Source of the DNA: Lepidodermella squamata
Taxonomy: Eukaryota > Animalia > Gastrotricha
Reading direction: 5' to 3'
Assembly (NCBI GenBank): GCA_047495785.1
Contig: JBLDXI010000021.1
Span: 992,001 to 1,056,000, forward strand
DNA length: 64,000 nt
Below the pieces are notes generated by a model that worked only from the letters and a program-made list of their open reading frames with translations, was not told where the DNA came from and did no database searches. Position numbers and translations under genes: made by a program. How positions within the stretch are numbered: position 1 is the first letter of the stretch; each line of letters starts with the position of its first letter. Positions 25,870 to 62,913 of the stretch are shown piece after piece.

Positions 25870-27034
25870 TTATTTCGCGACTAGAGTAATAGCGGTGATA
25901 ATGGCCAATGCGCCCAGGGTCGCATCAACACGCCCAGCACCGCTATCGGCCGGTTTCGCCTGGTCCGTACGGCCAGTATTAGCCGTCGCGACGCTGGCGG
26001 CGCCTGTTGTTCGAGAGTTGGTCGCAACACGACGGCCGTACATTTGCTGCAAATTGCGGGAAGCCTGCGCCACAGGACCGCCCTGGCCTCCGATGGCCTG
26101 AACCTTTCGGAAAACAGCCATTTGAGCACGTGAAATGGGTTGTTTCGCGGCGAAAATAGTCCAGACGGCGCTTTCTGTGCACGGCGGGGTCGCCAGCGAG
26201 CCGTTGTAGCGGTAAAATTGCGTTGTCGTAGCAAGAGCTGGCAGCATGTTGATCAACGTAACGTTAACGCTGACGAGAGCTCCAGCTTGTGCAATGCGAT
26301 CAACAGCCGCAATCATCGGAGCAATCGCATTGTTTGTATCGCCAAACTGAAAAAAGATTGAAACGCTTATCGTCTTGAATTTTGGGATTTTTATTAAAAT
26401 TTACGGTGAATAGGTAGGAGAAAACAGCAAACTGGTCAATCAAGCCATCATCGTTGTTGCTTTTGCTGGATCGATACGTTAGCAGTTGCATTTCCAACGG
26501 GGCTGGTTTATAGTCGACATAGTGATCGGAGCCTTTCATTAAATTAAATAAAAAAAAATCCACCTTAAGATATTGGAATTTTTTTATTTACCCTCGCAGT
26601 CGGTGCCAGCCCATCGGAATTCGATGCTTCGGATGAAGTATTCACCCGACAGTCCACCGCCCATGATTTTAGGCAGACGTTGGTCTTCATCTTGCAGGTC
26701 GACGGTCCATTTGATGCCTCGATTGCCAGGATTGCTCAGGGTTCCGTTGATGTTATTTTGGAAATTTACGAATCGCAGAGTGGTGAGAGATTGGTCGTAG
26801 AATACTTCGAAGGTATTTATGGCAATAGGACTTTGACGGCGACCAGTCAGGCAAATAGGGCTCCATTTCTCTTGAGCTGTGAAAGGCAAAAACGTTTTAA
26901 ATTTTATTTATTCACGAATTTCGTTTACCAGTATAAGACCAGTTATCAGTATCATCAGCTGTTTGAACACGGAAATGGGTTAGCGAGTCGAAAATGACCA
27001 ATGCCAGCAGGTAGAATGCGTTCCGAAACGCCAT
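25870..27034 (-). CDS. CA1: acatalytic alpha-CA-related protein, signal peptide and GPI-like tail
   Basis: WSY, CLTGRRQSPI, IEFRW (in place of FHFHW), GSDH, LEMQL, YRYNGSLATPPC, hydrophobic C-terminus. Confidence 0.9.
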
Positions 27035-27411
27035 TTCAACCTTCAACACGAGACGAGTGAGTTTTACTCAACAAAACTACTGCAAGTACAGTTAGGTATA
27101 GGTATATGATTTGGACACAAAAAAGCTCCTATTCCGCGTCGTGTCGATGCAAAAGGATCAAGGCTCCCTGCGAGCAAACAGCGACGCATGCTCACCTGTA
27201 ATCTGGTTTGATTAAAAAACATCGGTGCAAAAAATTTATTATTGTTCTGCAAAATTTTCTGTAATCGTTCTAATCGCCGCGTGATTAAGCGACCGGTTCG
27301 AAATCAAGGCCTGTATAATGGCTATAATAAAAGGAGGCGGGAATAAAAATTAATTCTTTTATTGCTCTGCCTTGCGTCAGATCATTGAACGAACGGTGAC
27401 TAATATAATAT

Positions 27412-28598
27412 CTACTCAGCAGCCCAGTTCGCGTAGACGATGCTGCTGTCGTCGACCTGACTTTTAAGGCGGCTACGCATCTCCCGCATTGACGCAATCG
27501 ATGGCTCGGCGGCGCTGTTTCGTGTTTTGACTAGCGAGTCGTAGTAATTACGGCTCATCGGCAGGCGCCGTTCAGATACGAACCAAGCGACTGATTGTTG
27601 AAAGCACGGCGGCTCGGTCAACGTGCCCTGGTACCGATAGAAGCGCGGGTAATTCTCGAGGCCCGGAACTAGGCGGGACAGGACAAGCGGGACCGGCAAA
27701 ATACCAATCGGATTCAGCGTTAAAAATTCCCATTCTGAAGAATGAGCTAACGAGCTGTTGTGCTCACGAGCTAAAATTTTTCTCGCATCCGTCAGCTTTT
27801 CGTCATCGAAAAAATCGAACAAAACTGCTAAGACAAGCAGGCCATTTTTCCGCGGCTTTGCTTTATCAAATGTTTGAAATTTGATGTTAAAAAATACCAA
27901 ATGTACCTATAGATTCAGAGAGAATTCGATGAAAATATAAGATTCAATAGAGGACTTACTTCAACGGGAGATAATTCAAGTTCTATTGCGTGGAATGAAC
28001 CTTCGCAAGTTGACATTCCGAAGTGAATCTGAATTTCATGAAGGGCGTAAATTCCCCCCAAGTGGCCGCCGTCAATCGTAGGTAGTTGATGCCAGTTCGA
28101 TTTCTTCAATGGAACCCATACTCCTGGTAGAATAATAAAAATAGCAATTTTTTTATTAAAAATAGATTTTTTACGCGAATTTCTTGTAGTAGCAGAAACC
28201 ATTCCATACATTTCTTTGCCGAAATTTTCAAATCGAATTGGGTGCTTGATAAAATCGGAATCGAGTTTCGAGGAATATGGGCACAACAACATAGGGCCGA
28301 TATTTCGACTTGGGTAGCACAAATTATCCGAGTTGATAATCGAAGTCAAATTAGGCTCGGGCGTGAAAAAATGAGCGTTGCGAGGGACATTTTCGGTAAC
28401 AACCTGCGAAGTTGCGGGGGATGTAGTCGATTTTAGCTTCGATTGTTTCGCGTTTAGTTGCTTTTTCGGAGCTTTTTTCGCCGCCTTCTTATCCGGCAAG
28501 AGACGACCGTCGATCAGATCGATATTCAGCAACTCATCGCTGGCAACCAACAACGTATTGATAAGAAAAATCAACAGTGCGAAATTTTCAAAATTCAT
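27412..28598 (-). CDS. CA2: divergent alpha-CA-related protein (Q94/H96/H119), secreted, Lys-rich N-terminus
   Basis: EIQIHFG, GSFH, PVE|VHLVFFN, YRYQGTLTEPPC. No hydrophobic tail. Confidence 0.85.
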
Positions 28599-28945
28599 AA
28601 TTGCTGAAGTTATGGCACAACTTTGAGATGAAATTATCCTTCCTCGAACATGAGGCGTAATATTTATGGGTATTAGTCACTAGAGTAGCCTAATTGGATC
28701 CGCTCCAGTGGAAGTCAGCTGCTAGCTTATTAGTTCTCACATGGACGGTGTGGTATCTCCATTTTTCTTTCCGCCCTCGCAACTTTCTGGCTGACCCTGA
28801 TCAAATCACACGGTAGCGTTTATTTTTGCTGCCTTAATTATAAGCAATACACAACGAAAAATCTTAAAATATCATAAGTTATTATTACGAGCATTTTTGT
28901 TGCTTTTCAATTATGACTTGAATTTCGCGAAAATTTTCGTTAATT

Positions 28946-31109
28946 TTACGGTCTGACATTCGTGAGAACTTTCCGCCCATACAACTGCTGAATATCGCGG
29001 TGAACAGTTGGCAAAGGCGTGTCGTCATCCGATAGAGCGTATCGAAAAGCGGCGATTTGCTGCTTTGAAATCGACTGACGTGCCGCGAAAACCGTCCAAA
29101 CGGCGTTTTCCGAACACGGTGGCTGGGCCAGTGACCCGTTGTAGCGGTAATATTGAATCGTGCTTGGCAACGGAGGCAGCAAGGCGCTTAGGGTAATGTT
29201 CATCATGTCTGGTTATAATTATTTTTTATTAAGAAAATTGGGGGGAAAAAATATATACTCTCGCTTCCGAAATATGAAATTCTCTCAACCGCAGCGATTA
29301 GTGGATCTATTGCATCGTTCGATTCTCCCAACTGCAAGAAAAAAAACGAAATTTCCAAATAAAGTTCTCATTTTTCTCTGAATACCTGGTAGAGATAAGC
29401 GAATATAGCGAAATCAGCCGGTCTTTCGTTATTCTGCTGAGTTGTCCGATAAGTCAGCATCTGGAGCTCAAACTGAGCAGGTTTAACATTGATGTAGTGA
29501 TCGGAGCCTGAAAATCAGAAATTTTTCGAAAATCTCTAAAAATGTCCCTAATTGATACCATCGCAATCAGAATTGCTCCATCGGAAATCAATGCTATGAA
29601 CGAGATATTCCCCGTCCAGGCCACCTCCACTAACTTTTGGCAGGGCTGGGCTGAAGTCTGGCAAACTAACACGCCACTTGATGCCACGATTCCCGAGATT
29701 CCCGACAGTTCCAGCTATCGGGAAGCTGAAGTTCATGTAGCGTATCCCTGTCAATGACCGTTCGTAGACTGCATCGAACGTATTGATGTGAACAGGCGAT
29801 TGTTGCTTGCCTTTCAAACACATAGTCGGCCAGATATCTTGCGCTGAAAATTAAAAAATTCAGTGAAATTTACAAAATAATTCCAGCAAGCTTTTACCTG
29901 ACCATGACCAGTCAGCTGCTGATACAAAATCAAGATTCGGCCTTCTCACAGGTGGCGCAGTTGTTGGTTCCGTAACCTCCGATGGATCAGGTGTAGTCAC
30001 TATCGGTCTTTTGCACATGCCTCTAGCAATTACCGTTCCAGTGACTAGGGACGACCTGAAATTTGAAAGAATGCATCGGCCATAGGTTGGGCGAACCAGG
30101 CGATGAGGCTTTGAAGGATTGCGCCTGGTTGCGTCGGTTATCCTGCGAAAGTACGCCAATTGAGCGCTGGAAATAGACAGTTTGTTGCCGAAAACTGTCC
30201 ACGTGGCTGATTCGGTGCAAGGCGGGGTGGGCAACGAGCCGTTGTAGCGGTAAAATTGCGGCGTGACGTATGATGGCGGTATCAAAGTTTCCAAATCGGT
30301 ATCATAAGGCTCTTCAAAAATAAAAAATTATTTAAAACCAATAAAAAGCCTTGAATTATTACTCGAAGTCGCATATTGGGTGACCCAGTCGACGCCATCT
30401 TTAATTATTCCTTCCAGGTAAGAACTGGCCTCGCCGAGCTGGAAAAATCGTGAAAATAATCGGATTTTTTTCTTTAAGCTGGAATTTACCGTGAACATGT
30501 AGGAAAAAATTGCGAAGTCATTTGTTTGGTCATCGAGACCCATTAGCAAGCTAGCTCGCGAGGTGATCAACTGCATCTCCAAAACAGCCGGCTGGCCGTC
30601 TATTGTATGATCGGAGCCTATACTCAACAACAGCCTTTAACGATTTATACGAAAATGACAGTGATTTACCTTCTTTATTGTCATCGCTCCATCGGAACTC
30701 AATGCGACGTGCGAAGTAGGTATCACCTAGACTGCCGCCGGTTATTTTTGGTAATCTTCCGGTGGATTCACTCGGACTTTCGATCGTGTATCTCAATCCC
30801 TGATCGCCAGTGTTGCGAAGCCATCCCGAGAGAGGGGTGTCGAAATTGATGAACCGAAATCGCTCGAGGGACTGGTCGTAATACACCTCTGATGAATTTA
30901 TATTGATAGGGGATTGAGCTCGACCTATTGAGCACTCGCCTGGTCGCCATGTTCTTTGAGCTAAGATCAAAATTTGATTATAAAATCATTAATTTATTAA
31001 AAATGAGACCTGTGTAGGTCCAACTATCGCCGAACTGAGCTTGAATGATCGGAAGAAATCCGCTGATAAACAGCAACAACCAAGCATTCATTTCCTTCAA
31101 CAGGTTCAT
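28946..31109 (-). CDS. CA3: double-domain acatalytic alpha-CA-related protein
   Basis: One signal peptide. Domain 1 has IEFRW/GSDH/EMQ/GSLPTPPC, then a Pro/Thr linker ending DWSWS|. Domain 2 has IDFRW/GSDH/ELQ/GSLAQPPC. Confidence 0.85.
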
Positions 31110-31579: not shown

Positions 31580-32632
31580 TTACAGAAGCAATTTGGCAAT
31601 TAGACCGCTGGCAAGCAAGAACGGCAGTGAGGAGGTCGATTGAGCGCCCGCGCCATACGCGGCCTTGTCGTTCGAATAAACCACACGGCCGTGCAGTTTT
31701 TGGATCGAGCGGTAGTTGAGCGAGGTCGCGTGTTCGCCTTTCGCGTTCACCTGATGAATAGAGCGGAACTTGGCTAGCAGGGCCGGGTCGGCATCGGCGT
31801 GCTGGGTGATGACAGTCCACGTGACTGATTCGTCGCAAGTCGGCGTCGTTAACGAGCCGAGGTAGCGGTAAAAACTCTTCGTATTTGTCAAAATGTCCTC
31901 GATATACCGAGTCATATTGACACGACGCTCTAGAAAAAAATCGATAAATTATTTAAAAAAATCAGATTTTAATTTCACACCTGGGACGGTCGCTTTCGGC
32001 ATTTTGAGGTTGTCCAGGAGACTGCTGTACTCTTGCGACAAAAATTGGCCGAGTTTCGAGTTGACATGACTCGCGTCTTTCGCCGCGTTTATTAGGATAC
32101 CAACAACAGCCAGGCCATCGCTTTTGCTCTTAGCTTCGACGAGGTTTTGATATTTGGTGTTAAAATGAACCAAATGCAGCTCGAGAGGTGAACGCGTGTA
32201 ACTATAAAATTTCCAGAATTAATTAAAAAAATCGAAATTCTGGTTAAATTACTCAATGACGTGCTCCGAGCCGTCACAATCGCTAACGCCCCAATGAAAG
32301 TGAAGAGAATGAAACTGGTATTCGCCCTTGAGACCACCGCCAGAAAGCTTAGCCTTCGAGCTGCTGTTGGCACTAGCGGCAAACGCAACTGAATGGCCGT
32401 TGTTGATGTAGTCACCAAGCGTAAGATCGGCGGGATAGCTGAACTGCAGGTAGCCCAGGCGAGGGTCGTGGACAGCCTCTTGAAGGCTCAGGGCAACGGG
32501 TGACTGGCGCCGGCCGGTTTTGCACACGCCGCCCCAGTTGCGGCCGATTTCGGCGTAGTCCCAAGGCGCATCGGCGCCAAACGTGAACTCAGCCGCGAGA
32601 AGTGATAAACAGACAATCTTGAGCAGAGACAT
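31580..32632 (-). CDS. CA4: alpha-carbonic anhydrase with canonical active site and GPI-like tail
   Basis: NNGHS (His64), LHFHWG, GSEH, ELHLVH, YLGSLTTPTC. Confidence 0.95.
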
Positions 32633-40100: not shown

Positions 40101-41430
40101 TTAATAGAGATCTATAGAAAAATGAGAAGGTAGTAGTAGTGATGATGATGTTAGAATAAGAAGTGAGACTGTCAATGACAGAATTAATAGTGGCCATTTT
40201 GCATTAGTCGACAACGGGCGGGCATCAGGTGCGTTCGAGGTAGACGGGTACCTAGCCATAGGCGGCTTGAAACCGGGTGGAGCCTGGGCGTCGCGGCTGT
40301 TCGTTGTGACAACGCGGCCGTTCAGCCGTTGAATAGGCCTGAAGTTATTCTCGAGCGGGTCGAGCGCGTTCGATATGGGCGAGAAGGCCTTGACGTGCGT
40401 TCGAAACGCTGCGAGAGAATTTAACGAGATCGGGATGCGATCGGCGAACACGGTCCATGTGACTGTTTCCGAACACGGCGGCGTTGTAAGCGAGCCGTCG
40501 TAGCGGAAGTAGACCCCATCGCGAAGTATGCCGAGTGGAATAATTTTGGGAAATGATAACATCATAGGCACCTGGCTGCCGGGTTTTGATACCTGAGGCA
40601 ACAATGAGGCTATAGCTGCGAAATCGCCATCGGGCACGTTATTATCGACCATTGTCATGATAAAGCCAATCACAGCCAGGCCGTCTGGCTGACTAGCCGC
40701 CTGGTCGAATGAGCCGTATTTCCTGTTGTAATGAACCAAGTGAAGCTCCATAGGACCGGACCGATAGTCTAAACAAATCAGGAAAAATTAGCGAGAATTC
40801 GAGATTAAGTCGAAAAATTACCTATCACATGCTCTGAGCCGAGACATGCCGAATCAGTTTGAGCTCCTCCTAAAAAAAATCAGAGATTCAAATTTGCTGA
40901 GAAAAAAGCTCGAATATGACTTTACCCCAGTGAAAATGTAGCTGATCGAGTACGAAGCCATCAGGTCCTAGCCCTGATCCAGCGATGCGTGGCATCTCGG
41001 CGATCGACGCGTTGATTTTCCATAGCAGGCCCTGGCCTGTATTTTTGAGCTCGCCGAAATAAGTACCGGCAAAGTTGTAGAACTGCATCGGGTCGCTGAA
41101 CAGCAATGGGTCCATAACGGCGTCCAATGTTGCGATGTGAACCGGCGACTGGCGCCGACCATTACCGCACGTATCACTCAAATCATTCCACGCATCAATG
41201 TCTAAAATTTCAAATTTAACCCAATTAATATTAAAAAATCCACCTTAATTTTAGCGTAAAACGAAAAATAACTTACCATGATATCCCCAATTCAAGCTCT
41301 CCGTTAATTTCGGTGTCTCTCGCTTGTTATCAGAACCTAGGCGGTAGTGTTGGCGTGCGTCCGTCTTCGCGCCATAAATCGTAATCAGTAGCGCAGTTGA
41401 AACAAACAAAATGTCACGCAATCGAACCAT
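40101..41430 (-). CDS. CA5: alpha-carbonic anhydrase, Zn triad intact, hydrophobic C-terminal anchor
   Basis: CGNGRRQSPV, QLHFHWG, GSEH, MELHLVHYN, YDGSLTTPPC, NNFRP. Confidence 0.95.
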
Positions 41431-45874: not shown

Positions 45875-47082
45875 ATGCATCTCAACCTCGCTCTGACGGT
45901 AAATAGATCCGTAAAATTATGAAAAAAATTTAATTTCCTCTCAAAATAATTTTAGCTGACAGTTTTGCTCCACCAACTGCCATTGCTTTTTGCCGCTTGG
46001 GATTATAAAGGTCAGTGATTAAAAGCATTAAATCATAGATTTACAAAATTCTTTCAAGATTTCAACCAATGGGGAACAATTAACCCGGTTTGTAATACTG
46101 GCCGTGAGCAATCACCTATTGCCATAAATGGGGCGAAGGCCATTCCCGACAGTCGCCTTGCAACTGACAAGCTTCGGTTCAATAATTACGCCGGTGTCAG
46201 GCCCGGAACGCTGACAAACAACGGCCATACTCTGCAGTATTCACTGGAAACTGCTTCGGTTATCGAACACCGGCTTCGAAGGGCTGCGGCTGGAAGCGGC
46301 TCGTCGGCCTTGAAAGTTCCCTCGATCAGTGGCGGTGGATTGTTAAACGAGTACGAGTTCAAACAGGTGCACTTTCACTGGGGCCGCCTATCGCCAACAG
46401 TTCAAGGCTCCGAGCACGTGCTGGACAACAAACCGTCCCCGCTCGAAGTTCATTTTGTCCATTTTAATAAGAAATACGGAAATATTACGACGGCGATTGG
46501 CAAGGACGACGGCTTGGCTGTAATCGGATTCTTGTTTGAATACTCGCAAACGAAATCGAACGTGGATTACAAGCAGTTTGTTAGTAATGTGCCCAAAGTC
46601 ACCGCAGCTAATTCAAACGGTGAGTTGAAATGAATTCGAGGAGGGATAATCCCGTTATTTTCAACCCTAGCTCCAACTTCGATTGATTTCGGGAAGGTCA
46701 TTCCTAAGTCGGCTCTTGACGGTACCGGTGTTTATTACCGATATTTCGGCTCTTTGACTACGCCAGGGTGCGCAGAGGTGAGTTCCCATGGAATTTTATT
46801 TTTCACAAATTTTAATTTAAATTTGTATAGGTTGTTACGTGGACAGTTTTTGCCGAGCGAATTCCCATGGATGAGAAGCTGCTCGGCGAGTTTCATAAGC
46901 TGCGAAATACCGAGGGAGCTGCTCTTATCGACAATTTCCGACCCCTGCAAAACGTATTCCGCCGCCAAATTACGACCAATCGGAGAAATGGAACGAGCAC
47001 AACTGAGCCGGGTGGTTCGATCATTTTCTTCATGGCTTCAACTTTCTTTAATATGGCTATGCGGTTGGTGAAAGCTACTTAG
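45875..47082 (+). CDS. CA7: alpha-carbonic anhydrase with canonical active site
   Basis: MHLNLALT|LTVLL signal peptide, NNGHT, QVHFHWG, GSEH, EVHFVH, GSLTTPGC, DNFRP. Confidence 0.95.
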
Positions 47083-47375: not shown

Positions 47376-48946
47376 ATGATCTCGTCCTTAAGATTGCTTG
47401 TAAGTCTATATAAATTTATGCTATTATTTAAGATTATTTCACAATCTTACAGATGTTCATCCAAACCTTCTCAGTGTTGATTCCTTTCCTCGAAACTGTA
47501 CTTTTCAGCTGGAATTATAAAGGTAATGGAGTAACTATGGAAAAAACATGCTTTTCGAAGGCTAAAAAATCAGCTTCAGCTTAAAAAATCTGAAATCTTA
47601 AACAAAGTAAAACATACATGAGCAATTAGCGATTGATTTTTACCCTCATTTACGGTGACTGTTTGAGTTCCAAGATTCGCTTTTAAAATTGTGGGTCAAC
47701 ATGTGAATATAATTAAGGTAAAAGATCAGCTGCTTTTTTGAATTTACGAAAATGATATTTTTTCGGTCGCACATTGTCCGGTTATCCCGAATAGTTCTGT
47801 CTATTGATCTGATGCTTTTTTATTTCGAGAGCCGGAAAAATGGGGAGAACTCTGTCAGAAAAGAGGCCGGCAATCTCCGATAAACATAATGCGAAACGAA
47901 TCAGTCTACGACGAAAAATTTGACCAGCAACCTATTCGCTATCGCGGGTTTTCCCCTGATACGAATTTGACAGGTTGGCTGTTCAACTCTGGCTTTTCAG
48001 GTTCTTAAGAAAACTTTCAATTAAAAATGTTGTAAAAATTCAAACTTGTAAATACCTAGTTCAATTCACCGTGGCTAGATCTATACCTTCGTCTTCTCGT
48101 CCGACAATGGTTGGTGGTGGTCTCGGAGGCGCAAATGGTTACATTTTCGAGCAAGCTCATCTGCACTGGGGCGAAAGTCCTTTCTCTAATTCTGGAAGCG
48201 AACACTCTATAGGTAAGGATTTATTTAAAAAAAATCATAATCAAGTTATAATATGTTATAGACTATACGTATTCGGCTGCCGAGCTACACCTCTTGTTCT
48301 ATTCGAGCAAGTATTTTTCATATAAAGACGCGCTGAGTTATAGCGACGGAATTTTGGGCGTTGCCTTCTTCTTGGAGCCAGTATTGTATGACAACAAAAC
48401 TGAGGAAAATGACGAGCTCCAATTTTTTGAATTCATACCCTCAATTTCTGGCGAAGATGCGACTCGTGAGAAAAATCCAAATTATTTGTGGTTGTATGAT
48501 GCATTAATTTTGTATCAGGTTCAATTTCACTTGACCCTTCGACCTTGCTACCTCGTTTAGCTCAAAAGAATGGCTCGATTTTTTACCAATATGCCGGCAG
48601 TTTCACCACCCCGCCGTGCCTTGAAGACGTCATTTGGTTAGTTTATGAAGAGCCAGTGAAACTGCCCCTACAACGCTTCGAATTTCTGTGGCAAACCAGT
48701 CATCGAAGTTACAACTCTTCATCGGCCAATTATGAAATAGTTAAGCTGGCTAACACCAAGCGCCCCCAACAGGATTTGGCCGGCAGAACGGTTTTGACCA
48801 ACAAATTCAGCAACTTTTCAATCGCGAAAATGAACGAAAATAATGTCGATGAATCCTTAGATGCGTCTGCTTTTCGTGATAACTCTGCGACCTCAAGTTA
48901 CTTTTCGAATTATATTGTTCTCGTGATGTTAGTACATCAGCTATGA
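47376..48946 (+). CDS. CA8: alpha-carbonic anhydrase, Zn triad intact, GPI-like tail
   Basis: MISSLRLL|MFIQ signal peptide, QAHLHWG, GSEH, ELHLLF, GSFTTPPC. Confidence 0.9.
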
Positions 48947-49144: not shown

Positions 49145-50251
49145 ATGACAAGCCCCTACTTCGTGGTCGTACTCTCTTTGTTCCGATGCTGTTCGGGTGT
49201 TGTGTTACCCTGGACCTACGATTCGCCTATAGGCTGGAATACAGGGTCGTGTCAAACTGGTTCGCGACAGAGTCCGATCGCAATTTTCTCAAATGAGACG
49301 ATTTTCGACCCAGGCTTGGTCAGCAGGCCGATTCGATTCCTTGATCACAACAAAACTTACACGGGCGAACTTTTCAACAACGGCTACACTGTTCAGTTTA
49401 ATATCAACAAAACTATCCCCATCAATCAACGCCCGCGTATCACGGGACATGGTCTAGGAACCCAGGGCTACATTTTTGAGCAGGTCCATTTTCATTGGGG
49501 CAACGGTCCTATGTCTAACGATGGAAGCGAGCACGAAATAGATGGAATAAGAACGCCTCTGGAGGCTCATTTTGTCTATTTCAATGGGAAATATCGGTCG
49601 CTAACTGAGTCGATGGGGAATTCGGACGCAGTTGTGGGGCTCGCTTTCCAATTTTTCGGGTCAAATGATACTGATACTAACGATACAACTGTTGATTATT
49701 CAGCATCATCGAACAATCTAGATTTCGTTAGAATTGAAGACACTTCAGGTATAGACGAAAAAATTAGCTTTTCTTCTAAAATCTGTAAAATTTCTGTCTC
49801 AGTTTTTCCAACTTTGAATATCGGCAAACTGATTCCTAACTGGGCAGTTTTAAATTCCAGCGTATATTTCCGTTACAATGGATCATGGGCGACGCCGCCG
49901 TGTTTCGAAAACGTGCTAGTCAACATCTATCAACAGCCGATTTTCCTGCCGATGAGTCAATTCGAGAAGTTTTTCAATCTCACAGTTCGCCGCCGTGCCA
50001 GCGACAACTCCACATCGAGCAGCCGATTCCTCCCTCTTCTAAATACGTATCGCCGACTTCAGCCGAAAAATAATCGCCAGGTTTTGGCGAACCGTCAATT
50101 CACTAATTATTCATACTTGAACGTTTCATTGCTGGGATCTACTGAGAATCTGACGAAAAATCAGCCAAATGCTGCTAATTTCCACTCATCATCACTCTCT
50201 TGCCTATTAATTGTAGCTTCGTTAGTTTCCAGCTTAATCAGCATGTGTTAG
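49145..50251 (+). CDS. CA9: alpha-CA with W198/A199 variant site, one intron (49749-49802)
   Basis: QVHFHWG, GSEH, EAHFV, NGSWATPPC, GPI-like tail. Confidence 0.92.
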   Translation: MTSPYFVVVLSLFRCCSGVVLPWTYDSPIGWNTGSCQTGSRQSPIAIFSNETIFDPGLVSRPIRFLDHNKTYTGELFNNGYTVQFNINKTIPINQRPRITGHGLGTQGYIFEQVHFHWGNGPMSNDGSEHEIDGIRTPLEAHFVYFNGKYRSLTESMGNSDAVVGLAFQFFGSNDTDTNDTTVDYSASSNNLDFVRIEDTSGIDEKISFSSKICKISVSVFPTLNIGKLIPNWAVLNSSVYFRYNGSWATPPCFENVLVNIYQQPIFLPMSQFEKFFNLTVRRRASDNSTSSSRFLPLLNTYRRLQPKNNRQVLANRQFTNYSYLNVSLLGSTENLTKNQPNAANFHSSSLSCLLIVASLVSSLISMC

Positions 50252-51289: not shown

Positions 51290-52406
51290 ATGATGAACCC
51301 CTACTTCTTGGTTGTATTCTCTTTGCTTTGCGAACTCCGATGTTGTACGGGTGTTGTGTTACCTTGGACCTACGATTCGCCTATAGGCTGGAATACAGGG
51401 TCGTGCCACACTGGATCGCGGCAAAGTCCGATCGCTATTTTCTCAAATGAGACAATTTTCGATCCTGGCTTGGTCAGCAGGCCCATTCGATTCCTAGATC
51501 ACAGCAAAAATTATAGCGGCGAGCTGTTCAACAACGGCTACACTGTTCAGTTTAATATAAACAAAACCATTCCCTTTAATCAACGCCCCCGTATCATGGG
51601 CCATGGTCTAGGAACCCAAGGTTACATCTTTGAGCAGGTCCATTTTCATTGGGGTAACGGTCCTATGTTAAACGATGGAGGCGAGCACGAAATAGATGGT
51701 TTGAGAAGGCCCCTTGAAGCTCATTTTATCTACTTCAATGCGAAATATCGGTCGATAACTGAGGCTCTGGGGAATTCGGACGCTGCTGTTGTTATCGCTT
51801 TCCAATTTTTCGGATCAAATGAAACCTACGAAACAACGGTTGATTATTCAGCATTATCGACCAACCTTGATCTCGTTAGAATTGAAGACACTTCAGGTAT
51901 ATTGAATAATTAAGGTTTTATCTAAAATTTATCAAGTTAATTTCACAGTGTTTCCAACTCTAAATATCGGGAAACTGATTCCTAACTGGGCATTTTTCAA
52001 TTCAAGCGTATATTTCCGTTACAATGGATCATGGGCGACGCCACCGTGTTTTGAAAATGTGATATTCAGCGTCTACCAACAGTCGACTTCACTGCCAATG
52101 AGAGAAATCGAAAAGTTTTTCAATCTCACGATTCGCCGCCATTCTGCAGATAACAGCAGCTCCACATCCAGCAACCAATACCGATTTCTCCCTCTTCTTA
52201 ACACGTATCGACAACTTCAGCCGAAAAATAATCGCCAAGTCATGGCAAATCGACAATTCGCCAATTCATACCTGAACGTTTCGTTGCCAGGATCGACAAA
52301 AAATCAGCAAAATGCCGCTAATTTTTCACATCTTCACTCGTGCCCACTCTTGGGCCTAATAATGCTGATTGTAGCATCGTTAGTGTCCAGCTTAATTTAT
52401 TTGTAA
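51290..52406 (+). CDS. CA10: recent tandem duplicate of CA9
   Basis: Near-identical peptide (VVLPWTYDSPIGWNTGSC...), GGEH, GSWATPPC, same single intron. Confidence 0.92.
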
Positions 52407-52603: not shown

Positions 52604-53794
52604 ATGAGTTTAATTAACTCCATAATTTTCGCGCTCTGCGTTGTTGGTCTATCAAGAGCTGCCACTACATTCTGGACCTATGAAGGTAAATATAAACAGA
52701 AGAAATGTTGCGTAATATTGTTTATCAACTTATTGGATTATTAAGGTGCAGCAAGATGGGCCGATTTGTGCGCAAATGGTCGAAAACAGTCGCCAGTGAA
52801 CATCATCACTTCACAGGCTATGTTCGATCGAAATCTCTACAACAACCCGCTTGTATTTTCCAACTACTCAGGCAACATAACTGGAGATTTCGCCAACACT
52901 GGCTATACAGGTAAGTATATCAAAATCGAAATTTTAATTTTAATTTTTAATAATAATTTTGCAGTTCAATTTGATATTAGCAAATCAATCCCAGCAGCTT
53001 ATCGGCCTCGTCTTCGCGGCGCTGGATTGCCAGCCGGCAGCCAATACGTTTTCGACAATGTTCACTTTCATTGGGGCAATAGCTCGACAGGCCACGGCTC
53101 CGAACACGTTATTGACGGCGAATCGGCCGCAATTGAAGCTCATTTCGTCCACTACAACACAAAATACACCTCCATTGCAGATGCTTCAATCCACCCAGAC
53201 GGCCTAGTTTCACTTACATTTTTGCTTGAAATCGATAGAAAACCAGGCAGTAACGTTTCTAATACTACATCAGGAGTTGATTACGACCAGTTAACCCGGT
53301 TCATTTCGCGAATTGTTAATCAGGATTCAAAACTGCGCATCCAAATTGATTTATCCACCCTGATTCCAGCAGTGACAATATTCGGGCAAAATGCGACTTT
53401 TTTCAAATACGACGGCTCCATGTCAACACCGCCGTGCCTTGAAGTTGTTCAGTGGTTTGTTTTCGAGCAGCGAATTTACCTGCCTAAGGAGATTCTCGAT
53501 CGATTTTGGCTTGCTACTGTTAAGAGGGACAACACTACAGCAATGTTATTTAACACTTATCGACCTCTTCAAAATTTGGCTGGCCGAATAGTACGAACTA
53601 ATCGGGCGATTAACTTCGAACAACCTAATTTGACAACTATGGTAATGGTCGCGAAAAATTATACTAACAGCAGTGTTGAAGTTCGGAAGAATAACGCAGC
53701 GTCTATTCACTATTGTCCTGTCATTTTTGTTTGTCTTTTCCTTCAATTGAGCAAATTTATCTCAGACAATCACGATTGCCTCCTCGATCAGTGA
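52604..53794 (+). CDS. CA11: alpha-carbonic anhydrase, Zn triad intact (M198/S199)
   Basis: NVHFHWG, GSEH, EAHFVH, DGSMSTPPC, NTYRP. Confidence 0.92.
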
Positions 53795-54299: not shown

Positions 54300-54311
54300 G
54301 TGAAACAAAGG

Positions 54312-54476
54312 TACAGCGACAAAACAGCAACTTCGCGAAACAGCGAATGCGACAAAACAGCGAAAAATTACTATGTAAAAGATGCATCGTGCTTCTGCTG
54401 TTATGTCGCAAATTGAAAAAGTTGCTGTTTTGTCGCGTTTGCTGTTTTGGGTATTTGCTGTTATGACGGTCTGCCG
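54312..54476. mobile_element. Small fold-back element (MITE-like remnant)
   Basis: Perfect 18-bp inverted repeat GCGACAAAACAGCAACTT (54316-54333 / 54419-54436), nested GCGACAAAACAGC/GCTGTTATGTCGC pair, repeated AAACAGC units. Confidence 0.6.
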
Positions 54477-54979: not shown

Positions 54980-57339
54980 ATGTTGGAGATATTAGCTATT
55001 ACGACGCTGATGCTACCATCCATTTTATTGGCAGCCGAGCAGCAGTCTTTTAAACTTTATTCAGGTAAAAATTCACTTCGCCTAATTTTTGTATGCAAAT
55101 TTTCGCTTTTTTTCGTAAGATTTCGGTTGGGCAGCAACGTGTAGCGGTGGCAAGAAACAGAGCCCGGTTAATATCGATACATCCAAAGTTGAAGTCGACC
55201 CTGATCTGCAAGATGATCCACTCATCTTCGATAACTACTCCTGGAATTCGGTATCTGGAAACTTGACCAACGACGGCCTAACTATTAAATTCACAATTGA
55301 CGACACGATTGATGTAAAAACTCGCCCGAGAATCAACGGCGGCGGTCTTGGACAGTTTCCTTACGTCTTCAACCATCTTCAACTGCACTGGGGTAGGTTT
55401 GAGGTGCTTCTCTCGAAGAGAATTGAAAATATTTATTAACCCAGGTAATTCATCGTTTGCCCCAAGTGGGTCGGAACATACGATTGACGGCCAGGCTTCT
55501 CAGGCTGAGGTTCAATTCATCCATTACAACAGCAAATATCAGTCATTTGAGGTTGCCAGCAACAACTTTTCTGATGGTGTCGCTGTGATTGCATTCCTAA
55601 TCGAGACTGTTACTGACCCTAACAAAGTCACTACAGACTACACTCAAATCACCAATCTTACATCGCAAATTACAACTGTTGGTAGCACTGGTAAGTAATA
55701 ACCAACTGAAATTGTGGGGTCTAATAACACATTATTGTCAAGTTTCGACCTCACTGGATTTCGGTTCCCTTGTTCCATACTCAGCTCTCGCTAGTTCGGC
55801 TCGTTTTTACCGATATGGAGGCTCTTTAACCGCCCCGCCCTGCAGAGAGGTAGTGAACCTTTCAGCTTTGTATTTAGCAATTTAAAATGTGATCTCTCAA
55901 GGTGGTTACCTGGACTGTTTTCCAAGACAAAATACAGATGATGCCGAATGTATTGGATGATCTTCGCAAAGTTTTGGCTAATATCGAAGACGGAGATTCT
56001 AGCCGTGTTGTAACCATGGTTAACAACTACCGACCAGTTCAAAACTTGAACGGACGCGTTGTCACTAGCAACCAAGGCAATGATTCATCGATCAGTGGGA
56101 ACTCATCGGTCCCTGTCAGCCGAAATAGAACATCTATCACGACTACAACTCAAGAACCAGTTACATATCCTTGGGATTATTCTGGTCAGTATATTAAAAT
56201 TTGAATTTGAATTAATTGAATTGATTTTAATTTTTGAAATTGTATGAAAATTCAATTTTTTCCGCAGATACATCGGCTTGGAATGAATCGAGTAAAACTT
56301 GTTCAGTTGGAAAGCGGCAAAGTCCCATCGATATCTGGACCCACACCGCAGTCTATGATTCAAAACTGGCTAGTGATCGGTTGATTTTCGATCGATACAA
56401 CGGTCAAATCGGTGGCGAATATGCGAATGAAGGCTCAACTGTCAAGTTTACCATTGACAAGTCAATTTCGGCTGACAAACGGCCTAGAATCTACGGCGGT
56501 GGGCTTGGCGAGAAGGGTTACATCTTCGAGCAATTCCACCTTCACTGGGGTAAAGTGTCGAAAGGACCTGGCTCGTGCATGGGTGCGGAGCATCTCATAA
56601 ACAGCAAATCAGCACCGGCTGAAATTCACTTCGTCCACTACAACGCAAAGTACAAATCACTAGCGGAATCTCTCGGCTATTCAGATGGCCTAGCAGTTGT
56701 TGGTTTCTTCCTCGAAACTGTGGTCGACCCTAGTCTGGTGAAAAGCGACTACGAGCAGGTCACTAATTTGACCTCGCGAGTGCGTCGGGCTAGCAATAAA
56801 AGTAAGCGATGAATTATTACTAGACGATTTTATTACTTTATTATTTCGACTTTTTAGCTGGCACTAAATTTGACTTCGCAAAGCTGATTCCTTCGACGGC
56901 TTCGTCAGGCAAGGGTGTCTACTACCGTTACGATGGATCACTGACCACGCCACCTTGCAGTGAAGTCGTGACTTGGACTGTTTTCGAGGAGGCTATCCCT
57001 GTCCTAGCGTCCAGCCTTGACAGCCTTAGGGAGGCCACGAAATTCGTCAAAACTGATAATGGCTCAGATTCCACCCAAAAAATCACGATACCTGTTGAAC
57101 TGAGCAACAACTATCGCCCAGTTCAACAGCTGAATGGTAGAGTCGTGAAAACGAACTACCCACCCGGTTCTCGGTGGAATGGAGAAGCTAATACGAAAGA
57201 TTCGGGCAAAACGGCTGCTGGCTCTAACGCTACAACTCCCGCAAGCCAAGCTGATGCCGATGCTGTTAAGAAGAACAGCGCGATCAATATTCAATTCAAC
57301 GTAGCATTATTTATCGTCCTGATCTCGATTTTTTATTGA
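54980..57339 (+). CDS. CA12: double-domain alpha-CA (acatalytic domain 1, intact domain 2), GPI-like tail
   Basis: Domain 1 has NHLQLHWG/EVQFIH/GSLTAPPC, then a Ser/Thr linker ending PWDYS|. Domain 2 has QFHLHWG/GAEH/EIHFVH/GSLTTPPC. Confidence 0.9.
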
Positions 57340-57968: not shown

Positions 57969-60900
57969 ATGCTACTTCCAGTTTTTATCGCATTTCTTAG
58001 CTTATCCGCGGAGTCTGTTGAGTCCGCAGGAAGTGGGAGTTGGGGTTATTCAGGTAAAAATTAGCCCTTTAATTAAATAATTCCATTATAATAAAATTTC
58101 CAGATGCGGACAGTTGGGACCAAACTTGTAGCGATGGCAAGCGGCAGAGTCCTATCGATATCCGAACCAACTACGTCGTAGGCGATGCAAGTTTGGCAGC
58201 TGATCGGCTCATCTTCGACCGATATATCAACCAAACTCTCGCGGGAAATTACGTGAATACCGGCAAAACTGTTCAATTCACGATTAGCAGCTCCATTGCG
58301 GCGTCGCGACGGCCCCGAATTTACGGCGGGGGCCTCGGCGCCCAGGGCTACATCTTCGAACAACTCCACTTTCATTGGGGCCGATATTCGTGGGCTTCTT
58401 ACGGGTCTGAGCATTTGCTCGATGGCAATGCTTACCCGGCTGAAGTTCACCTGGTTCACTACAACAGCAAGTACGCGTCGTTTTCAGAGGCTGTTAAAAA
58501 CCAAGATGGCCTAGCTGTTATCGGATTTTTCTTCACCTCGACGACTGATCCAAAGGATATTGATACCGATTACACCCAAATCACCAATATGACGAATCAA
58601 ATCGTGGTCGAAAATGATAAAGGAGGTATGGATCGATTTTTCCTGAATTTTTTGGATTTTTTTATTTCCATTTTCATAGTGCCAATAACTATCGATTTCG
58701 GCAAGCTGATTCCTGGTTCTGCTAGAGCTGGGACCGGGAAATACTTCCGATATGACGGGTCATTGACTACCCCGCCATGTATTGAAGTAAGGGAACACAA
58801 ATTTATCGATTTATCGGCCCTAATTTTGCTATTTAAGGTTGTGACATGGACCGTTTTCGAGGAATTAGTGCCGATTCTCGGTGGGGCGTTGGATGACTTG
58901 CGGCGAGCCACGTGGACCGTGTCACCCTCCGGCCGTGATGATGAGACATGGGTCGAATCGATTGAGAATAATTACAGGCCCGTTCAGCCTATCAATGGCC
59001 GTGTCATTAAAATGAACCGACGCCCGCCGGCCGAAAAATACTGGGACTATTCGGATACTTCGAAATGGGCTGATATCAACCCGGTCTGTGAGACTGGCCA
59101 ACGCCAGAGCCCTGTTGACATTCAAACGCGATTTGTTGCGGCGGACACGGCACTGGCGAGTGATCGACTGGTTTTCGATCGATGGAACGCGTCTTTTACG
59201 GGCAGCTATGCTAACAACGGCAAGGGCGTGCAGTTCACTATCGATTATTCGGTCAGTGCTGATAAAAGGCCTAGAATTTACGGCGGTGGGCTTGGGTCAG
59301 ATGGCTACATCTTCGAGCAATTTCACATTCATTGGGGTAATATTTCATTTTCTCAAATTTTTCAAAATTTTAATTTTTTGAAATTTTAGGAAATTCTTCC
59401 CGACCGAATAATCCAATCGGAGCCGAGCATTTTATCGATGGTCGTTCAGCCCTGGGCGAGATTCATTTTGTCCACTATAACAGCAAATACGGGTCAATTG
59501 GAGAGGCGATTGGCAATGATGACGGTCTCGCCGTAATCGGGTTTTTCTTCGAAGTTGTAACCGATCCGAATTTCGTGAAAACCGACTACATTCAAGTGTC
59601 CAATCTCACCTCGAAAATTATTCAAAGCGGCTCGAGCAGTATGATGAAATAATTATTAATTTGGTAAAATATTCTGGTAATTTTTCCCTAGCTCAAGCGA
59701 CATTCAATTTCGGGAAATTTTTACCTACATCGGCTTCGGTTGGTTCAGGAATTTTTTACCGTTACGACGGCTCGTTGACAACCCCGCCATGTGCCGAAGT
59801 CGTTACTTGGACTGTTTTCGAGGAAAGAATCGCCATTCTGGCTTCGGCCTTGGATGATTGGAGGAAAACTACGACAAACAAGCGAACAGTCTACACGAGT
59901 AACGTGACCACCGTAGTTCCGATCACCAACAATTTTCGAGAGATTCAAGAGCTGAATTCGAGAGTGATCCGATCAAATCGACTGCCGCCTGGTGCTGTCA
60001 CATTCCGGCCCAGTTCTACAACTTCGACGATCAGGACTACAACAACTCGCCCGGCCGGAACAACCAGAACCGTCAAAGTCGTTAAAATTCCAGAAAAACC
60101 GTGGGATTATTCGGGTGAGAATTTGCTGTATAAACAGGGCATCTACCTGATATATAAAATCGGGAAATTTCTTAAATTATAAAATTCAAGCTTAATTTCT
60201 CAAGTTTCTTCAACATTCGTCCCAACTTTAAATTCTAGTTGTCTAACGTTGGCCGTAAATTTTATACATTTTTATAAATTATTCATAAATTTCAAAAAAT
60301 TAGGAAAAATTAGAAAGAATTCTCAAAATTTAATGGAAAATCAGGAATGCCCACCATTGCTTCATTTAAATCAGAAGCAAAGGCTGTTTTAACCTTCGAA
60401 AAACATTATTTGTCAAAAATAACCCTTCGTTAAGGTCTCTTCTCAATTAATTGAATTAGTTAATCTTCAATTTTTAGACCAAGATTATTGGGCCGAGTAC
60501 AACGAAGTTTGCAGATCAGGCAAGCAACAAAGCCCGATCGACATTCAAACAAGAACCGTGCAAAGCGATTCGCAACTCGCGAAAGACCCGTTATTTTTCG
60601 ACCGGTGGCAGTCAGTCAGCGGTGATTACTACAACAACGGCTATGGCACTCAATTCACAGTTAACAAGTCCATCCCAGTCGATAAACGGCCTCGAATCTA
60701 CGGCGGCGGTCTCGGCGCGAAGGGCTACATTTTCGAGCAGTTTCACATTCACTGGGGCAGGTATGCGAAACCGGGCGCGTGCATGGGTGCTGAGCATCAA
60801 ATCAACAGTCGAGGTGCGGCTGGTGAAATTCATTTCGTCCACTACAATTCGAAATACAAGTCTTTTACGGAGGCGATTGATTACGCCGACGGCTTGGCTG

Positions 60901-61517
60901 TAGTCGGGTTCCTTCTCGACGTAACAACCGATGCGAGTCAGGTTAAAGTCGACTACGATCAAGTGACAAATTTAACCCAACAAATTTCAATGCCTCTTGC
61001 AAAAGGTAAAAAATATCCACCTTAATTGAAATTTGACAAAAATTCCGAATTTCTCGCAGTGCCTGCTCAGTTCAATTTTGGCAAATTGATTCCACCCTCG
61101 GCGATCAAGCCCGGAATTTTCTATCGCTACGACGGGTCACTAACTACCCCGCCATGTATTGAAGTCGTGACCTGGACGGTTTTTGAAGAGCGTGTCCCAC
61201 TTTTAGCCCGAACTATGGCAGCTTTGCAATCAGCCCTGGCCAATGTGACCATCAACGACGCTGTTTCGAACGATACCTACAACATTCTTATGCCGATAAA
61301 TGACAACTTCCGAGATCTTCAGAGCTTGAATAAAAGAGTTGTTAGGACGAATCGGGTCGAACCGGTGACTACGACACCAGCGGCGCCTCAAGCAGTGGTC
61401 GCGGTCATGAAGAACGAAACGACAAATTCGACAAAATCTAATGCGCCGAGTCAGCCTGCCTGTAATTATTATTATCAATTCGTCGCTCTTCTTCTAGCGG
61501 CATTTTCTCTTATTTAA
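57969..61517 (+). CDS. CA13: triple-domain alpha-carbonic anhydrase, all three Zn triads intact, GPI-like tail
   Basis: One signal peptide and three consecutive QSP/HxHWG/ExHxVH/GSLTTPPC/NxR sets joined in frame (RRPPAEKYWDYS; Thr-rich linker ending PWDYS|). Confidence 0.9.
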
Positions 61518-61696
61518 AGGCGTAAGAGACATCTTTCATCCTTACCTGTGATACCCCTTGAATATTTTCCTGCTGTCTGAATAATTTAAAATAAATAACG
61601 GAATTTTATCAGATTTATTCAAAAAACTTGGCAAGGGTTTTCAGATATATCTATAGCTAGTTGAACATTTCAAGGTTTTGTGAGCTGTATCGCTGG

Positions 61697-62913
61697 CTAT
61701 AACAAAAATTTAGCAAACAACGAGGAAAAAATAATGACCAGAATTTTGGCTTTAGATTGTAATTCTGCTGAGTTTGCCTTCTTTGCTAATAGCAGAGAAT
61801 TCGTGTAAATTTTTCGAAGGCTGACATTTTGAATGGGCCGATAACTGGCAGCCATCGGCGTTTTCCCGCCATCCGACATCGATTTAGCGAAAAAGCTAGT
61901 CGCGAAAACTTTGATTTGATTCGGATTGGCATGAATCGCATTGCCAAAAACAGTCCATTGCACGGATTCGTAACACGGCGGTGCGGTTAATGAGCCGAAA
62001 TACCGGTAATATTTCGCGGTCGATTGAATCGAAGTCGACGTAACAGTGTTGTTACATTTCCCAGCTCGTTGCCACGCTTTGAAGGGTAGTAATTGGCTCA
62101 AATTCAGGTAGGTTTGAGCTGAATAGTCTTCGAGTTCAATTGCCGAAAAATTGCTGATTAATTCTGAATAATCAGCCTCGAATTCTCCAGTTCCTGTGTG
62201 GACTGGCTCGACCATGAAGGCAACAATTGCTAGGCCATCTTGTTTATTCACGCTGTTCTTATAGGATTTATAAGCCTGGTTGTAGTGGACGAATTGAATT
62301 TCGAGCGGCGTCGCCCAGTACTCGTCGCCTTGTAGATGCTCGGAGCCGCGCGTGCATGACCCCTCGTTGATCACGTCGCCCCAATGAAAGGCAATGTGGT
62401 CGAGGATGTACCACGAATTAAGGGTGCTGCCTGAAATTCGAGGCAAAAGTCGCGTTTCGTTAATTGCATTTGCAGACAAGGTCCACGTTACTGTATAATT
62501 TTTTTAAATTTTCAAAAAATTAATTAAAAAATCAAAATTAAAAACCGATTCTCCCATTGTTCTGCAAAACTCCTGGGAACGACCGTGACTCATCCGGGTA
62601 GTTGTCGAACCGCAGAGGGTCCTTAACCAGCTTGTCGCTGTATTCCGCATGGGCGGGTGCGAGATAAATTGGCGATTGGTACTTGCCATTGCCGCATAAA
62701 GGGTAACTCAAAGGCCACGCACTGATATCTGTAATTCACCAAATTTCGTGAGCGCAATGTAGTGTGATCGTTTATTTTACTTGTATAAGTCCAATGAGGA
62801 TCCACTGGTCCGATAACCGTGTTGTTATATTGGCAATTGATCGGAAAAATTAATAAGGACAGAGTAAATAGCAGTGAATCATAGCGCTGATTGATCAGTG
62901 TAGAATAAATCAT
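61697..62913 (-). CDS. CA14: acatalytic alpha-CA-related protein, GPI-like tail
   Basis: DHIAFHWG, GSEH, LEIQFVH, GSLTAPPC, ASYRP. Confidence 0.9.

What the first reader, a model, noticed from the sequence alone, without database searches (positions are those of the whole stretch)
25870..62913. Cluster of 14 extracellular alpha-carbonic anhydrase genes (18 domains) mixing enzymes, pseudoenzymes and multi-domain fusions
Seen: 14 genes in 37 kb, all with signal peptides and most with GPI-like hydrophobic tails. Twelve domains keep the His94/96/119 Zn triad and six have lost at least one ligand. Architectures have one, two or three domains. Known: animal alpha-CA expansions accompany biomineralisation, acid secretion and symbiont CO2 supply, and acatalytic CA folds (CARPs, RPTP-beta/gamma ectodomains) act as binding modules. 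Inference: this is a lineage-specific cell-surface CA toolkit in which catalytic and binding or regulatory paralogs diversified together. It is the best candidate for an undescribed system in this window.
Basis: partly seen in the sequence, partly recalled or inferred. Interest (0 to 1): 0.88.

Follow-up and report, generated by a model that had tools for sequence, protein, structure and literature searches.

The report
Large tandem array of surface carbonic anhydrases
This small animal genome holds an unusually large, old, side-by-side family of secreted or surface-anchored CO2-hydrating enzymes, about 40% of which have lost their zinc site yet are still conserved; this is a big lineage-specific version of a known kind of gene family, not a new kind of system.

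Summary
I rebuilt 14 intact genes (18 alpha-carbonic-anhydrase domains) at 25870-62913: 11 with one domain, two with two, one with three. All introns are GT..AG.

- **Targeting signals:** all 14 start with a signal-peptide-like hydrophobic stretch, and 12 end in a hydrophobic tail.
- **Zinc site:** 12 domains keep His94/96/119 and 6 have lost at least one.
- **RNA support:** transcriptome-like contigs skip the predicted introns and join the domains of the two-domain gene L and the three-domain gene M into single messages.
- **Extent:** the array runs 41 kb past the window, giving 35 domains in about 80 kb. The adjacent window's note s1-422670 saw that part. The genome holds about 50 such domains.
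- **Origin:** all 35 domains, plus three dispersed paralogs, form one clade apart from 44 reference domains.
- **Not assembly duplicates, not neutral:** the closest pairs have dS 0.38-0.50 and dN/dS 0.14-0.19, including a zinc-less pair. Of 24 coding differences from a related organism, 20 are synonymous.

"Lineage-specific" and "extracellular" fit. "Binding or regulatory" roles for the zinc-less copies, GPI anchoring and the physiological role are inferred only. Dual-domain enzymes, acatalytic relatives and lineage-specific expansions are all published, and public proteomes hold three-domain and dead-plus-active proteins. Expression of the other 12 genes was not tested.

The parts
25870..27034 (-). 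Gene A, 331 aa, one domain. Zinc ligands replaced (E94, R96, Q119); also D106 and A199. Signal-peptide-like N-terminus and hydrophobic C-tail.
   Evidence: Model and translation; HMM 155 bits; residues; ends.
27412..28598 (-). Gene B, 377 aa, very divergent CA domain (H94Q only; H96 and H119 kept). Lys/Ser/Thr-rich insert after the signal peptide, no hydrophobic tail, longest branch in the tree.
   Evidence: Pfam hit on the C-terminal exon, E 3e-15. Model; residues; tree end branch 2.37.
28946..31091 (-). Gene C, 572 aa, two zinc-less domains (C1: E,R,Q; C2: D,R,Q) joined by a Pro/Thr linker. Signal peptide, no hydrophobic tail.
   Evidence: The ORF runs continuously from the last exon of domain 1 into the 'DWSWS' start of domain 2, then a strong GT..AG intron follows. 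Two HMM domains. No RNA check.
31580..32632 (-). Gene D, 316 aa. Full triad, His64, Thr199. Signal peptide and hydrophobic tail.
40101..41430 (-). Gene E, 381 aa. Full triad. Hydrophobic segment followed by 17 more residues (GPI signal or transmembrane segment).
44423..45701 (+). Gene F, 337 aa, six exons. Full triad, His64. Thr-rich stalk and hydrophobic tail.
   Evidence: The first two mini-exons were read by hand..
45875..47082 (+). Gene G, 332 aa. Full triad, His64. Weakly hydrophobic tail.
   Evidence: Signal-peptide mini-exon read by hand..
47453..48946 (+). Gene H, 341 aa. Full triad. Short hydrophobic tail. The first intron (307 bp) is the least certain.
49145..50251 (+). Gene I, 350 aa. 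Triad intact, but Thr199 is Ala and Leu198 is Trp. 12 N-glycosylation sequons, hydrophobic tail.
   Evidence: Pfam E 2e-49. Nearest solved structure is CA XIV..
51290..52406 (+). Gene J, 354 aa, young paralog of I (83% amino-acid identity) with the same T199A and L198W.
   Evidence: dN/dS 0.19 and dS 0.50 against I.
52604..53794 (+). Gene K, 358 aa. Full triad, T199S. Hydrophobic segment followed by 14 residues.
54980..57339 (+). Gene L, 669 aa. Zinc-less domain L1 (Q,H,Q) fused in front of catalytic-type domain L2. Hydrophobic tail.
   Evidence: All six introns are supported by intron-skipping contigs or loose ends, including the 56185-56267 intron that joins L1 to L2. Against organism B, 17 of 20 coding differences are synonymous.
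57969..61517 (+). Gene M, 956 aa, three catalytic-type domains on Ser/Thr-rich linkers. Signal peptide and hydrophobic tail.
   Evidence: M1 and M2 share one transcribed exon (contigs at 58888-59260). M2 and M3 are joined by a 363-bp GT..AG intron seen in RNA contigs. Five of seven introns are supported. Three HMM domains.
61697..62913 (-). Gene N, 369 aa, zinc-less (A94, H96, Q119). Signal-peptide-like start and hydrophobic tail.
   Evidence: Pfam E 1.7e-40..

Best explanation
This is the left half of a roughly 80-kb tandem array, about 35 domains in about 30 genes, of extracellular-type alpha-carbonic anhydrases. It arose by repeated gene and domain duplication within this animal's lineage and has been kept under purifying selection. 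Shown: intact spliced genes, one clade, old and young duplicates, selective constraint, and single mRNAs for the two- and three-domain genes. Inferred: the products enter the secretory pathway, and most are held at the outer face of the cell membrane by a GPI anchor or a C-terminal hydrophobic segment on glycosylated Ser/Thr stalks. There, the roughly 60% of domains that keep the zinc triad, Glu106 and Thr199 would interconvert CO2 and bicarbonate for epithelial acid-base and ion transport or CO2 handling. More speculative: the roughly 40% that lost zinc ligands, through several separate losses, serve as non-catalytic partners such as binding, scaffolding or regulatory modules. Some of these are free-standing (A, N), some fused to each other (C), and one is fused to an active domain (L).
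For: PF00194 matches lie well above the cut-off. There are 14 stop-free models with canonical introns. RNA-type contigs skip 11 predicted introns and link L1-L2, M1-M2 and M2-M3, and depth is zero in the intergenic stretch 57600-57999. The triad, Glu106, Thr199 and the extracellular-type Cys23/Cys203 pair are tabulated. The genome's own cytosolic-type CAs lack those cysteines. Signal-like N-termini, hydrophobic tails and up to 13 N-glycosylation sequons are. The nearest solved structures are the extracellular CA XIV and CA VI. The array forms a single clade. Selection: dN/dS is 0.19 for I/J and 0.14 for the zinc-less pair x28/x29, and older pairs are saturated at synonymous sites yet intact. 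Against organism B, 20 of 24 listed coding differences are synonymous, including 10 of 12 in the zinc-less L1, while one 52-bp intron carries 12 substitutions and 2 indels. The replacement residues are themselves conserved (E/D94-R96-Q119 in A, C1, C2; X94-H96-Q119 in L1, N, x28-x33).
Against: There is no enzymatic, localisation or tissue data. Signal peptides and GPI signals were judged by hydrophobicity alone. RNA evidence covers only L and M, and run X1 is RNA by inference from intron skipping, not by its record. B and C lack a tail, so they would be secreted rather than anchored. E and K could be single-pass membrane proteins. Single ligand changes (B, x21, x34) may still allow metal binding. 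The organism and its physiology are unknown, so the physiological role is a guess. The listed differences from organism B are a subset (201 were not shown).
Confidence: 0.6

Rival explanations
1. It is a biomineralisation toolkit. The secreted and anchored enzymes supply bicarbonate to a calcifying surface, and the zinc-less copies act as matrix or nucleation proteins, as proposed for nacrein-like proteins and coral skeletal CAs.
For: Alpha-CA expansions in molluscs and corals are tied to mineralisation (PMC6639325; titles listed). The proteins look secreted.
Against: There are no acidic or Gly-X-Asn repeat inserts of the nacrein type in the 14 translations. The array is not related to the mollusc references. 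Nothing shows that this 121-Mb, short-intron animal calcifies.
Confidence: 0.12
2. This is birth-and-death turnover without new function. The zinc-less copies are decaying duplicates on the way to loss, and the large number reflects only a duplication-prone region.
For: One copy beyond the window (x26) has a frameshift or stop in its last exon. B sits on a very long branch. The ML tree needs six changes of triad state.
Against: All six zinc-less domains in the window sit in intact ORFs. dN/dS is 0.14 for the zinc-less pair x28/x29, and A, C1 and C2 are synonymous-saturated yet conserved. In L1, 10 of 12 differences from organism B are synonymous. L1 is transcribed and correctly spliced.
Confidence: 0.1
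3. The copies with altered zinc sites are still enzymes. They would bind metal through the remaining His and a Gln or Asp, or catalyse another reaction such as ester hydrolysis.
For: From my own knowledge, not checked here: engineered human CA II variants with carboxamide ligands (H94N, H119N, H119Q) keep some zinc binding and activity. Most altered domains keep H96, Glu106 and Thr199.
Against: Most altered domains have lost two or three ligands. A, C1 and C2 put Arg at position 96 and have also changed Glu106 and Thr199.
Confidence: 0.1
4. The multi-domain genes are artefacts: read-through or mis-joined models of neighbouring one-domain genes.
For: Tandem genes are easily merged by gene predictors. 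The three-domain proteins in public proteomes are unverified.
Against: In L, M and C no internal domain has its own signal peptide or stop codon. The exons stay in frame. RNA contigs cross the L1-L2 and M2-M3 introns and the shared M1-M2 exon. C has no RNA check.
Confidence: 0.04

Closest known systems
Vertebrate membrane-associated and secreted alpha-CAs (GPI-anchored CA IV/XV; CA VI, IX, XII, XIV)
   Same: PF00194 fold, signal peptide, the Cys23-Cys203 pair, C-terminal hydrophobic signal, and the zinc triad with Glu106/Thr199 in 12 of 18 domains. The best solved-structure matches are CA XIV and CA VI.
   Different: They are not orthologs: the array is a separate clade at about 30% identity. 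His64 is present in only 3 of 18 domains. There are 35 tandem copies rather than a handful of dispersed genes.
Dual-domain carbonic anhydrase of giant clams (Tridacna DDCA/tgCA; PMC5879104)
   Same: One chain carries a signal peptide, two alpha-CA domains of extracellular type, and a predicted C-terminal GPI or membrane anchor.
   Different: Both clam domains are catalytic. Here one fusion is dead plus active (L), one is dead plus dead (C) and one has three active-type domains (M). The mollusc two-domain references fall outside the array clade.
Carbonic-anhydrase-related proteins (CARP VIII, X, XI) and their lineage-specific expansion in malacostracan crustaceans (PMC13367328)
   Same: CA folds that lack zinc ligands but are conserved, and expanded in a lineage.
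   Different: The zinc-less domains here arose inside an extracellular, Cys23/Cys203-bearing clade. The ML tree needs six changes of state, so they did not descend from the ancient CARP groups. The genome has separate CARP-like genes elsewhere (C26 and C13).
Unpublished multi-domain CA proteins in public proteomes (tick and Bulinus two-domain; crab, Physella, pearl-oyster and fish three-domain predictions)
   Same: A tick protein pairs an active domain with an L94-H96-Q119 domain. A Bulinus protein pairs an N94-H96-N119 domain with an active one. Three-domain predictions of 725-947 aa exist.
   Different: Identity is only 40-45%, they are not in the array clade, and no RNA check of those models was made here.

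Membership tests
Alpha-carbonic anhydrase (Pfam PF00194) | Domain match above the curated cut-off | tested here: met
   (27-bit cut-off; 57-233 bits on single ORFs). All 18 domains were recovered.
Alpha-carbonic anhydrase (catalytically competent) | Zinc ligands His94, His96 and His119 | tested here: met
   Met in 12 of 18 domains and not met in A, B, C1, C2, L1 and N.
Alpha-carbonic anhydrase (catalytically competent) | Glu106-Thr199 gatekeeper pair | tested here: inconclusive
   Present in most domains. Thr199 is Ala in I and J despite an intact triad, and Ser in K. A, C1 and C2 have Asp106 and Ala or Pro at 199.
Alpha-carbonic anhydrase (catalytically competent) | CO2 hydration activity and bound zinc | not testable with these tools
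   Needs recombinant protein.
GPI-anchored extracellular CA (CA IV/XV type) | Signal peptide, Cys23-Cys203 disulfide cysteines, and a C-terminal hydrophobic GPI signal | tested here: inconclusive
   Hydrophobic N-terminus in 14 of 14 genes, cysteine pair in 17 of 18 domains, hydrophobic tail in 12 of 14 genes. No SignalP or GPI predictor was available, and there was no experiment.
GPI-anchored extracellular CA (CA IV/XV type) | Orthology to vertebrate CA4/CA15 | tested here: not met
   The CA4, CA15, CA6, CA9 and CA14 references lie on the other side of a 96% SH-aLRT branch.
CARP VIII/X/XI | Loss of zinc ligands with a conserved fold | tested here: met
   Six domains in the window and eight beyond it, with purifying selection.
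CARP VIII/X/XI | Descent from the ancient CARP clades | tested here: not met
   The zinc-less domains nest inside the array clade. Reference sampling of CARPs was thin: one cnidarian 'CARP10-like' sequence.
Receptor tyrosine phosphatase gamma/zeta ectodomain | CA-like domain followed by FN3, a transmembrane segment and phosphatase domains | tested here: not met
   In the models I built, the chains consist of CA domains plus short linkers and tails (316-956 aa). The only Pfam hit on the tested ORFs is PF00194.
Dual-domain CA (Tridacna type) | Two alpha-CA domains in one secreted or anchored chain | tested here: met
   L is RNA-supported. C rests on its ORF alone. M has three domains.

The most novel reading that the evidence does not exclude
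The conserved zinc-less domains are dedicated partners of the catalytic ones. They would pair with active paralogs at the cell surface, covalently in gene L and non-covalently for A, C and N. This would tune, localise or gate CO2/bicarbonate conversion, or sense it. The array would then be an enzyme-pseudoenzyme system that evolved repeatedly within one locus.
Probability: 0.12. Interest if true: 0.7.

Novelty: new variant of a known kind. Interest (0 to 1): 0.45.

Why it matters
At about 50 alpha-CA domains in a 121-Mb genome, this is far above the published arthropod survey, where the mean is about 9 non-CARP genes and the maximum is 19 (PMC13367328).

It offers a natural series for two questions. 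One is how an extracellular enzyme becomes a conserved pseudoenzyme: several separate losses within one locus, with two recurrent replacement patterns. The other is what is gained by chaining two or three CA domains on one anchor. The giant-clam paper calls the advantage of two domains enigmatic (PMC5879104).

The practical value is limited until the animal, the expressing tissue and the activities are known.

Tried and rejected
- **Automatic splice-path enumeration.** It merged neighbouring genes and added spurious introns. I replaced it with anchored, hand-checked models.
- **AU test of whether all zinc-less domains could form one clade.** It did not finish in two 300-s runs. The ML tree needs six changes of triad state. 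By my reading of that tree, only about two are forced by strongly supported branches.
- **Identifying the organism.**
  - No COX1 gene is in the assembly.
  - An intronless HSP70 gave 75-78% identity to arthropods, molluscs and tardigrades alike, and 83% to an unnamed ENA protein.
  - Cluster look-ups gave no useful names.
  - The taxon stays unknown, apart from 'animal with ~52-bp introns and no close relative in the protein databases'.
- **First homolog search with gene I.** It gave only 19 weak hits. A profile search and an exhaustive search were needed.
- **Literature searches.** The phrase searches, including 'three carbonic anhydrase domains', returned no paper on a three-domain carbonic anhydrase or on a CA expansion in a matching organism.
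- **Structure and complex prediction were not run.** The spliced proteins have no reference, and long sequences may not be typed.
Full report
**What is there.** The window is G000:C21:992001-1056000 of a 121-Mb, 151-contig assembly. A six-frame scan with Pfam PF00194 finds 114 exon-sized matches in the genome. Most lie on C21 between 1,018,017 and 1,097,373. The cluster therefore starts in this window and runs about 41 kb past its end.

I fetched the flanking DNA and scanned window plus flank with an HMM built from homologs and window ORFs. Chaining the hits by profile position gives 18 domains in the window (25990-62723) and 17 more beyond it. Long ORFs in the region hit PF00194 with E-values from 1e-15 to 1e-69.

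**Gene models.** The genes have short GT..AG introns. Thirty-one confident introns have a median length of 52 bp, with consensus GAG|GTAAGT ... TTTATAG|G. An automatic path search over-merged genes. I therefore curated each gene with anchored searches and by reading the DNA for the small signal-peptide exons.

The result is 14 models, A to N, with no internal stops and canonical splice sites (E corrected). Each covers a nearly full-length CA profile, giving 18 domains in all. C and L have two domains, M has three, and the rest have one. The array is interrupted at about 33-40 kb by unrelated genes, including a BTB-BACK-Kelch gene.

**RNA evidence.** Two public runs hold the 55000-60999 stretch.
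- Run X1 is only guessed to be RNA by its record, but it behaves as a transcriptome. Its contigs skip ten GT..AG introns at my predicted positions and give zero depth in the intergenic bins 57600-57999.
- Loose ends match the far side of two further predicted introns.
- These data join the zinc-less domain L1 to L2 across the 83-bp intron 56185-56267.
- They cover the single exon shared by M1 and M2 (contigs at 58888-59260).
- They join M2 to M3 across a 363-bp intron.

The two-domain gene L and the three-domain gene M are therefore each transcribed as one spliced message. Gene C rests on a continuous ORF from the end of domain 1, through a Pro/Thr linker, into the 'DWSWS' start of domain 2, followed by a strong intron. 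It has no RNA check. The other genes could not be checked, because only one call of 6,000 letters was allowed.

**Active-site and targeting features.** In an alignment anchored on the CA XIV alignment of gene I, His94/His96/His119 are all present in D, E, F, G, H, I, J, K, L2, M1, M2 and M3. At least one is replaced in six domains:

| Domain | Position 94 | Position 96 | Position 119 |
|---|---|---|---|
| A | E | R | Q |
| B | Q | H | H |
| C1 | E | R | Q |
| C2 | D | R | Q |
| L1 | Q | H | Q |
| N | A | H | Q |

- I and J keep the triad but have Ala at position 199 and Trp at 198, so they may be poor enzymes.
- His64 is present only in D, F and G.
- Cys23 and Cys203, typical of extracellular CAs, are present in 17 of 18 domains. 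They are absent from the genome's cytosolic-type CAs.
- All 14 proteins begin with a hydrophobic stretch. Twelve end in one, all except B and C. In E and K that stretch is followed by 17 and 14 more residues.
- Several proteins carry 10-13 N-glycosylation sequons and Ser/Thr-rich stalks or linkers.
- These are heuristic readings; no SignalP or GPI predictor was available.

**Beyond the window.** Of the 17 further domains, nine keep the triad and eight do not. One (x26) has a frameshift or stop. This matches in substance the neighbouring window's note s1-422670. The genome also has three dispersed extracellular-type genes and about a dozen cytosolic-type or CARP-like ones on C46, C13, C12, C26 and C55. 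That makes roughly 50 domains in all.

**Origin.** In a 93-row maximum-likelihood tree, the 35 array domains and the three dispersed extracellular-type paralogs form one group (SH-aLRT 96). The other side holds 44 reference domains (vertebrate CA4, 15, 6, 9, 14, 7 and 3; molluscs; arthropods; cnidarians; an acoel) and the genome's own cytosolic-type CAs, which group with CA7-type references.

Within the array:
- L2, M1, M2 and M3 cluster together, which suggests that the triple-domain gene grew by internal duplication.
- A is sister to C2, and A, C1 and C2 form a 100% clade.
- I and J, and x28 and x29, are young pairs.

The ML tree needs six changes of triad state. By my reading of the tree, only about two are forced by strongly supported branches, and the AU test did not finish. 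No close relatives exist in public data. The profile search gave at most 34% identity to gene I. An exhaustive HMMER search with a canonical member gave about 40-50% identity at best for full-length proteins.

**Selection and duplicates.** The most similar pairs are 85-89% identical in DNA.

| Pair | dS | dN/dS | Note |
|---|---|---|---|
| I / J | 0.50 | 0.19 | triad intact in both |
| x28 / x29 | 0.38 | 0.14 | both zinc-less |

All other pairs are saturated at synonymous sites yet intact. So the copies are neither assembly duplicates nor neutrally evolving.

Run X2 is DNA of a related organism and covers the locus colinearly. Of the 24 coding differences listed, 20 are synonymous, including 10 of 12 in the zinc-less L1. 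One 52-bp intron alone carries 12 substitutions and two indels. The list is a subset; 201 differences were not shown.

**Comparison with what is known.**
- Lineage-specific alpha-CA expansions are described for molluscs (PMC6639325).
- In arthropods the mean is about 9 non-CARP genes and the maximum 19, with a malacostracan expansion of CARPs (PMC13367328).
- A signal-peptide-bearing, GPI-predicted dual-domain CA sits on the apical membrane of giant-clam gill cells (PMC5879104).
- Among the database hits, a tick protein and a Bulinus protein each combine an active domain with a zinc-less one. Three-domain predictions exist in a crab, a snail, a pearl oyster and a fish.
- Neither multi-domain chains nor dead-plus-active fusions are therefore unique. 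My phrase searches returned no paper on a three-domain CA.

**Verdict.** The best reading is a large, old, lineage-specific array of secreted or surface-anchored CAs under selection, in which zinc-site loss happened more than once and the zinc-less copies were kept. Anchoring, physiological role and any pseudoenzyme function remain inferences. It is an unusually large and well-structured variant of a known kind of family. It is interesting as a natural experiment in pseudoenzyme evolution, but it is not a new kind of system.

Noticed in passing
L001-L005 (C21:1056001-1106000; continuation coordinates 69268-105376): The array continues with 17 more CA domains. Nine keep the zinc triad and eight do not. 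Most look like one-domain genes with their own signal peptides.
   Followed up: partly
L002, about C21:1,074,600-1,074,760 (continuation 82606-82761): Domain x26 has a frameshift or stop in its last exon. It is the only clear candidate pseudogene among the 35 domains.
   Followed up: no
window 49145-50251 and 51290-52406: Genes I and J keep all three zinc histidines, but the gatekeeper Thr199 is Ala and Leu198 is Trp. A triad count alone would not flag this loss.
   Followed up: partly
window 37090-39532 (-): A BTB-BACK-Kelch gene lies between CA genes D and E and interrupts the array. Further ORFs that I did not identify lie at 34273-35577.
   Followed up: no
L010 (C46:1330500-1340499), L011/L012 (C13:392000-408500): There are two separate small clusters of cytosolic-type CAs, which lack Cys23/Cys203 and group with CA7-type references. 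One zinc-less member is at C13:392968-393804 (D94, H96, Q119).
   Followed up: partly
protein P0287 (JGI metagenome contig, 8.5 kb): A 2170-residue predicted protein shows ten matched stretches to a CA domain. That implies five or more CA domains in one chain.
   Followed up: no
window 56328-56620, 58165-58442, 60699-60803: X1 contigs show 'opposite strands' joints inside exons. These are probably fold-back artefacts of the contig assembly rather than biology.
   Followed up: no
window 56801-56861: Next to the main 56802-56857 intron, one X1 contig shows a second joint form 3 bases further on, with the letters CTA in between. It may be an allele or an alternative acceptor.
   Followed up: no
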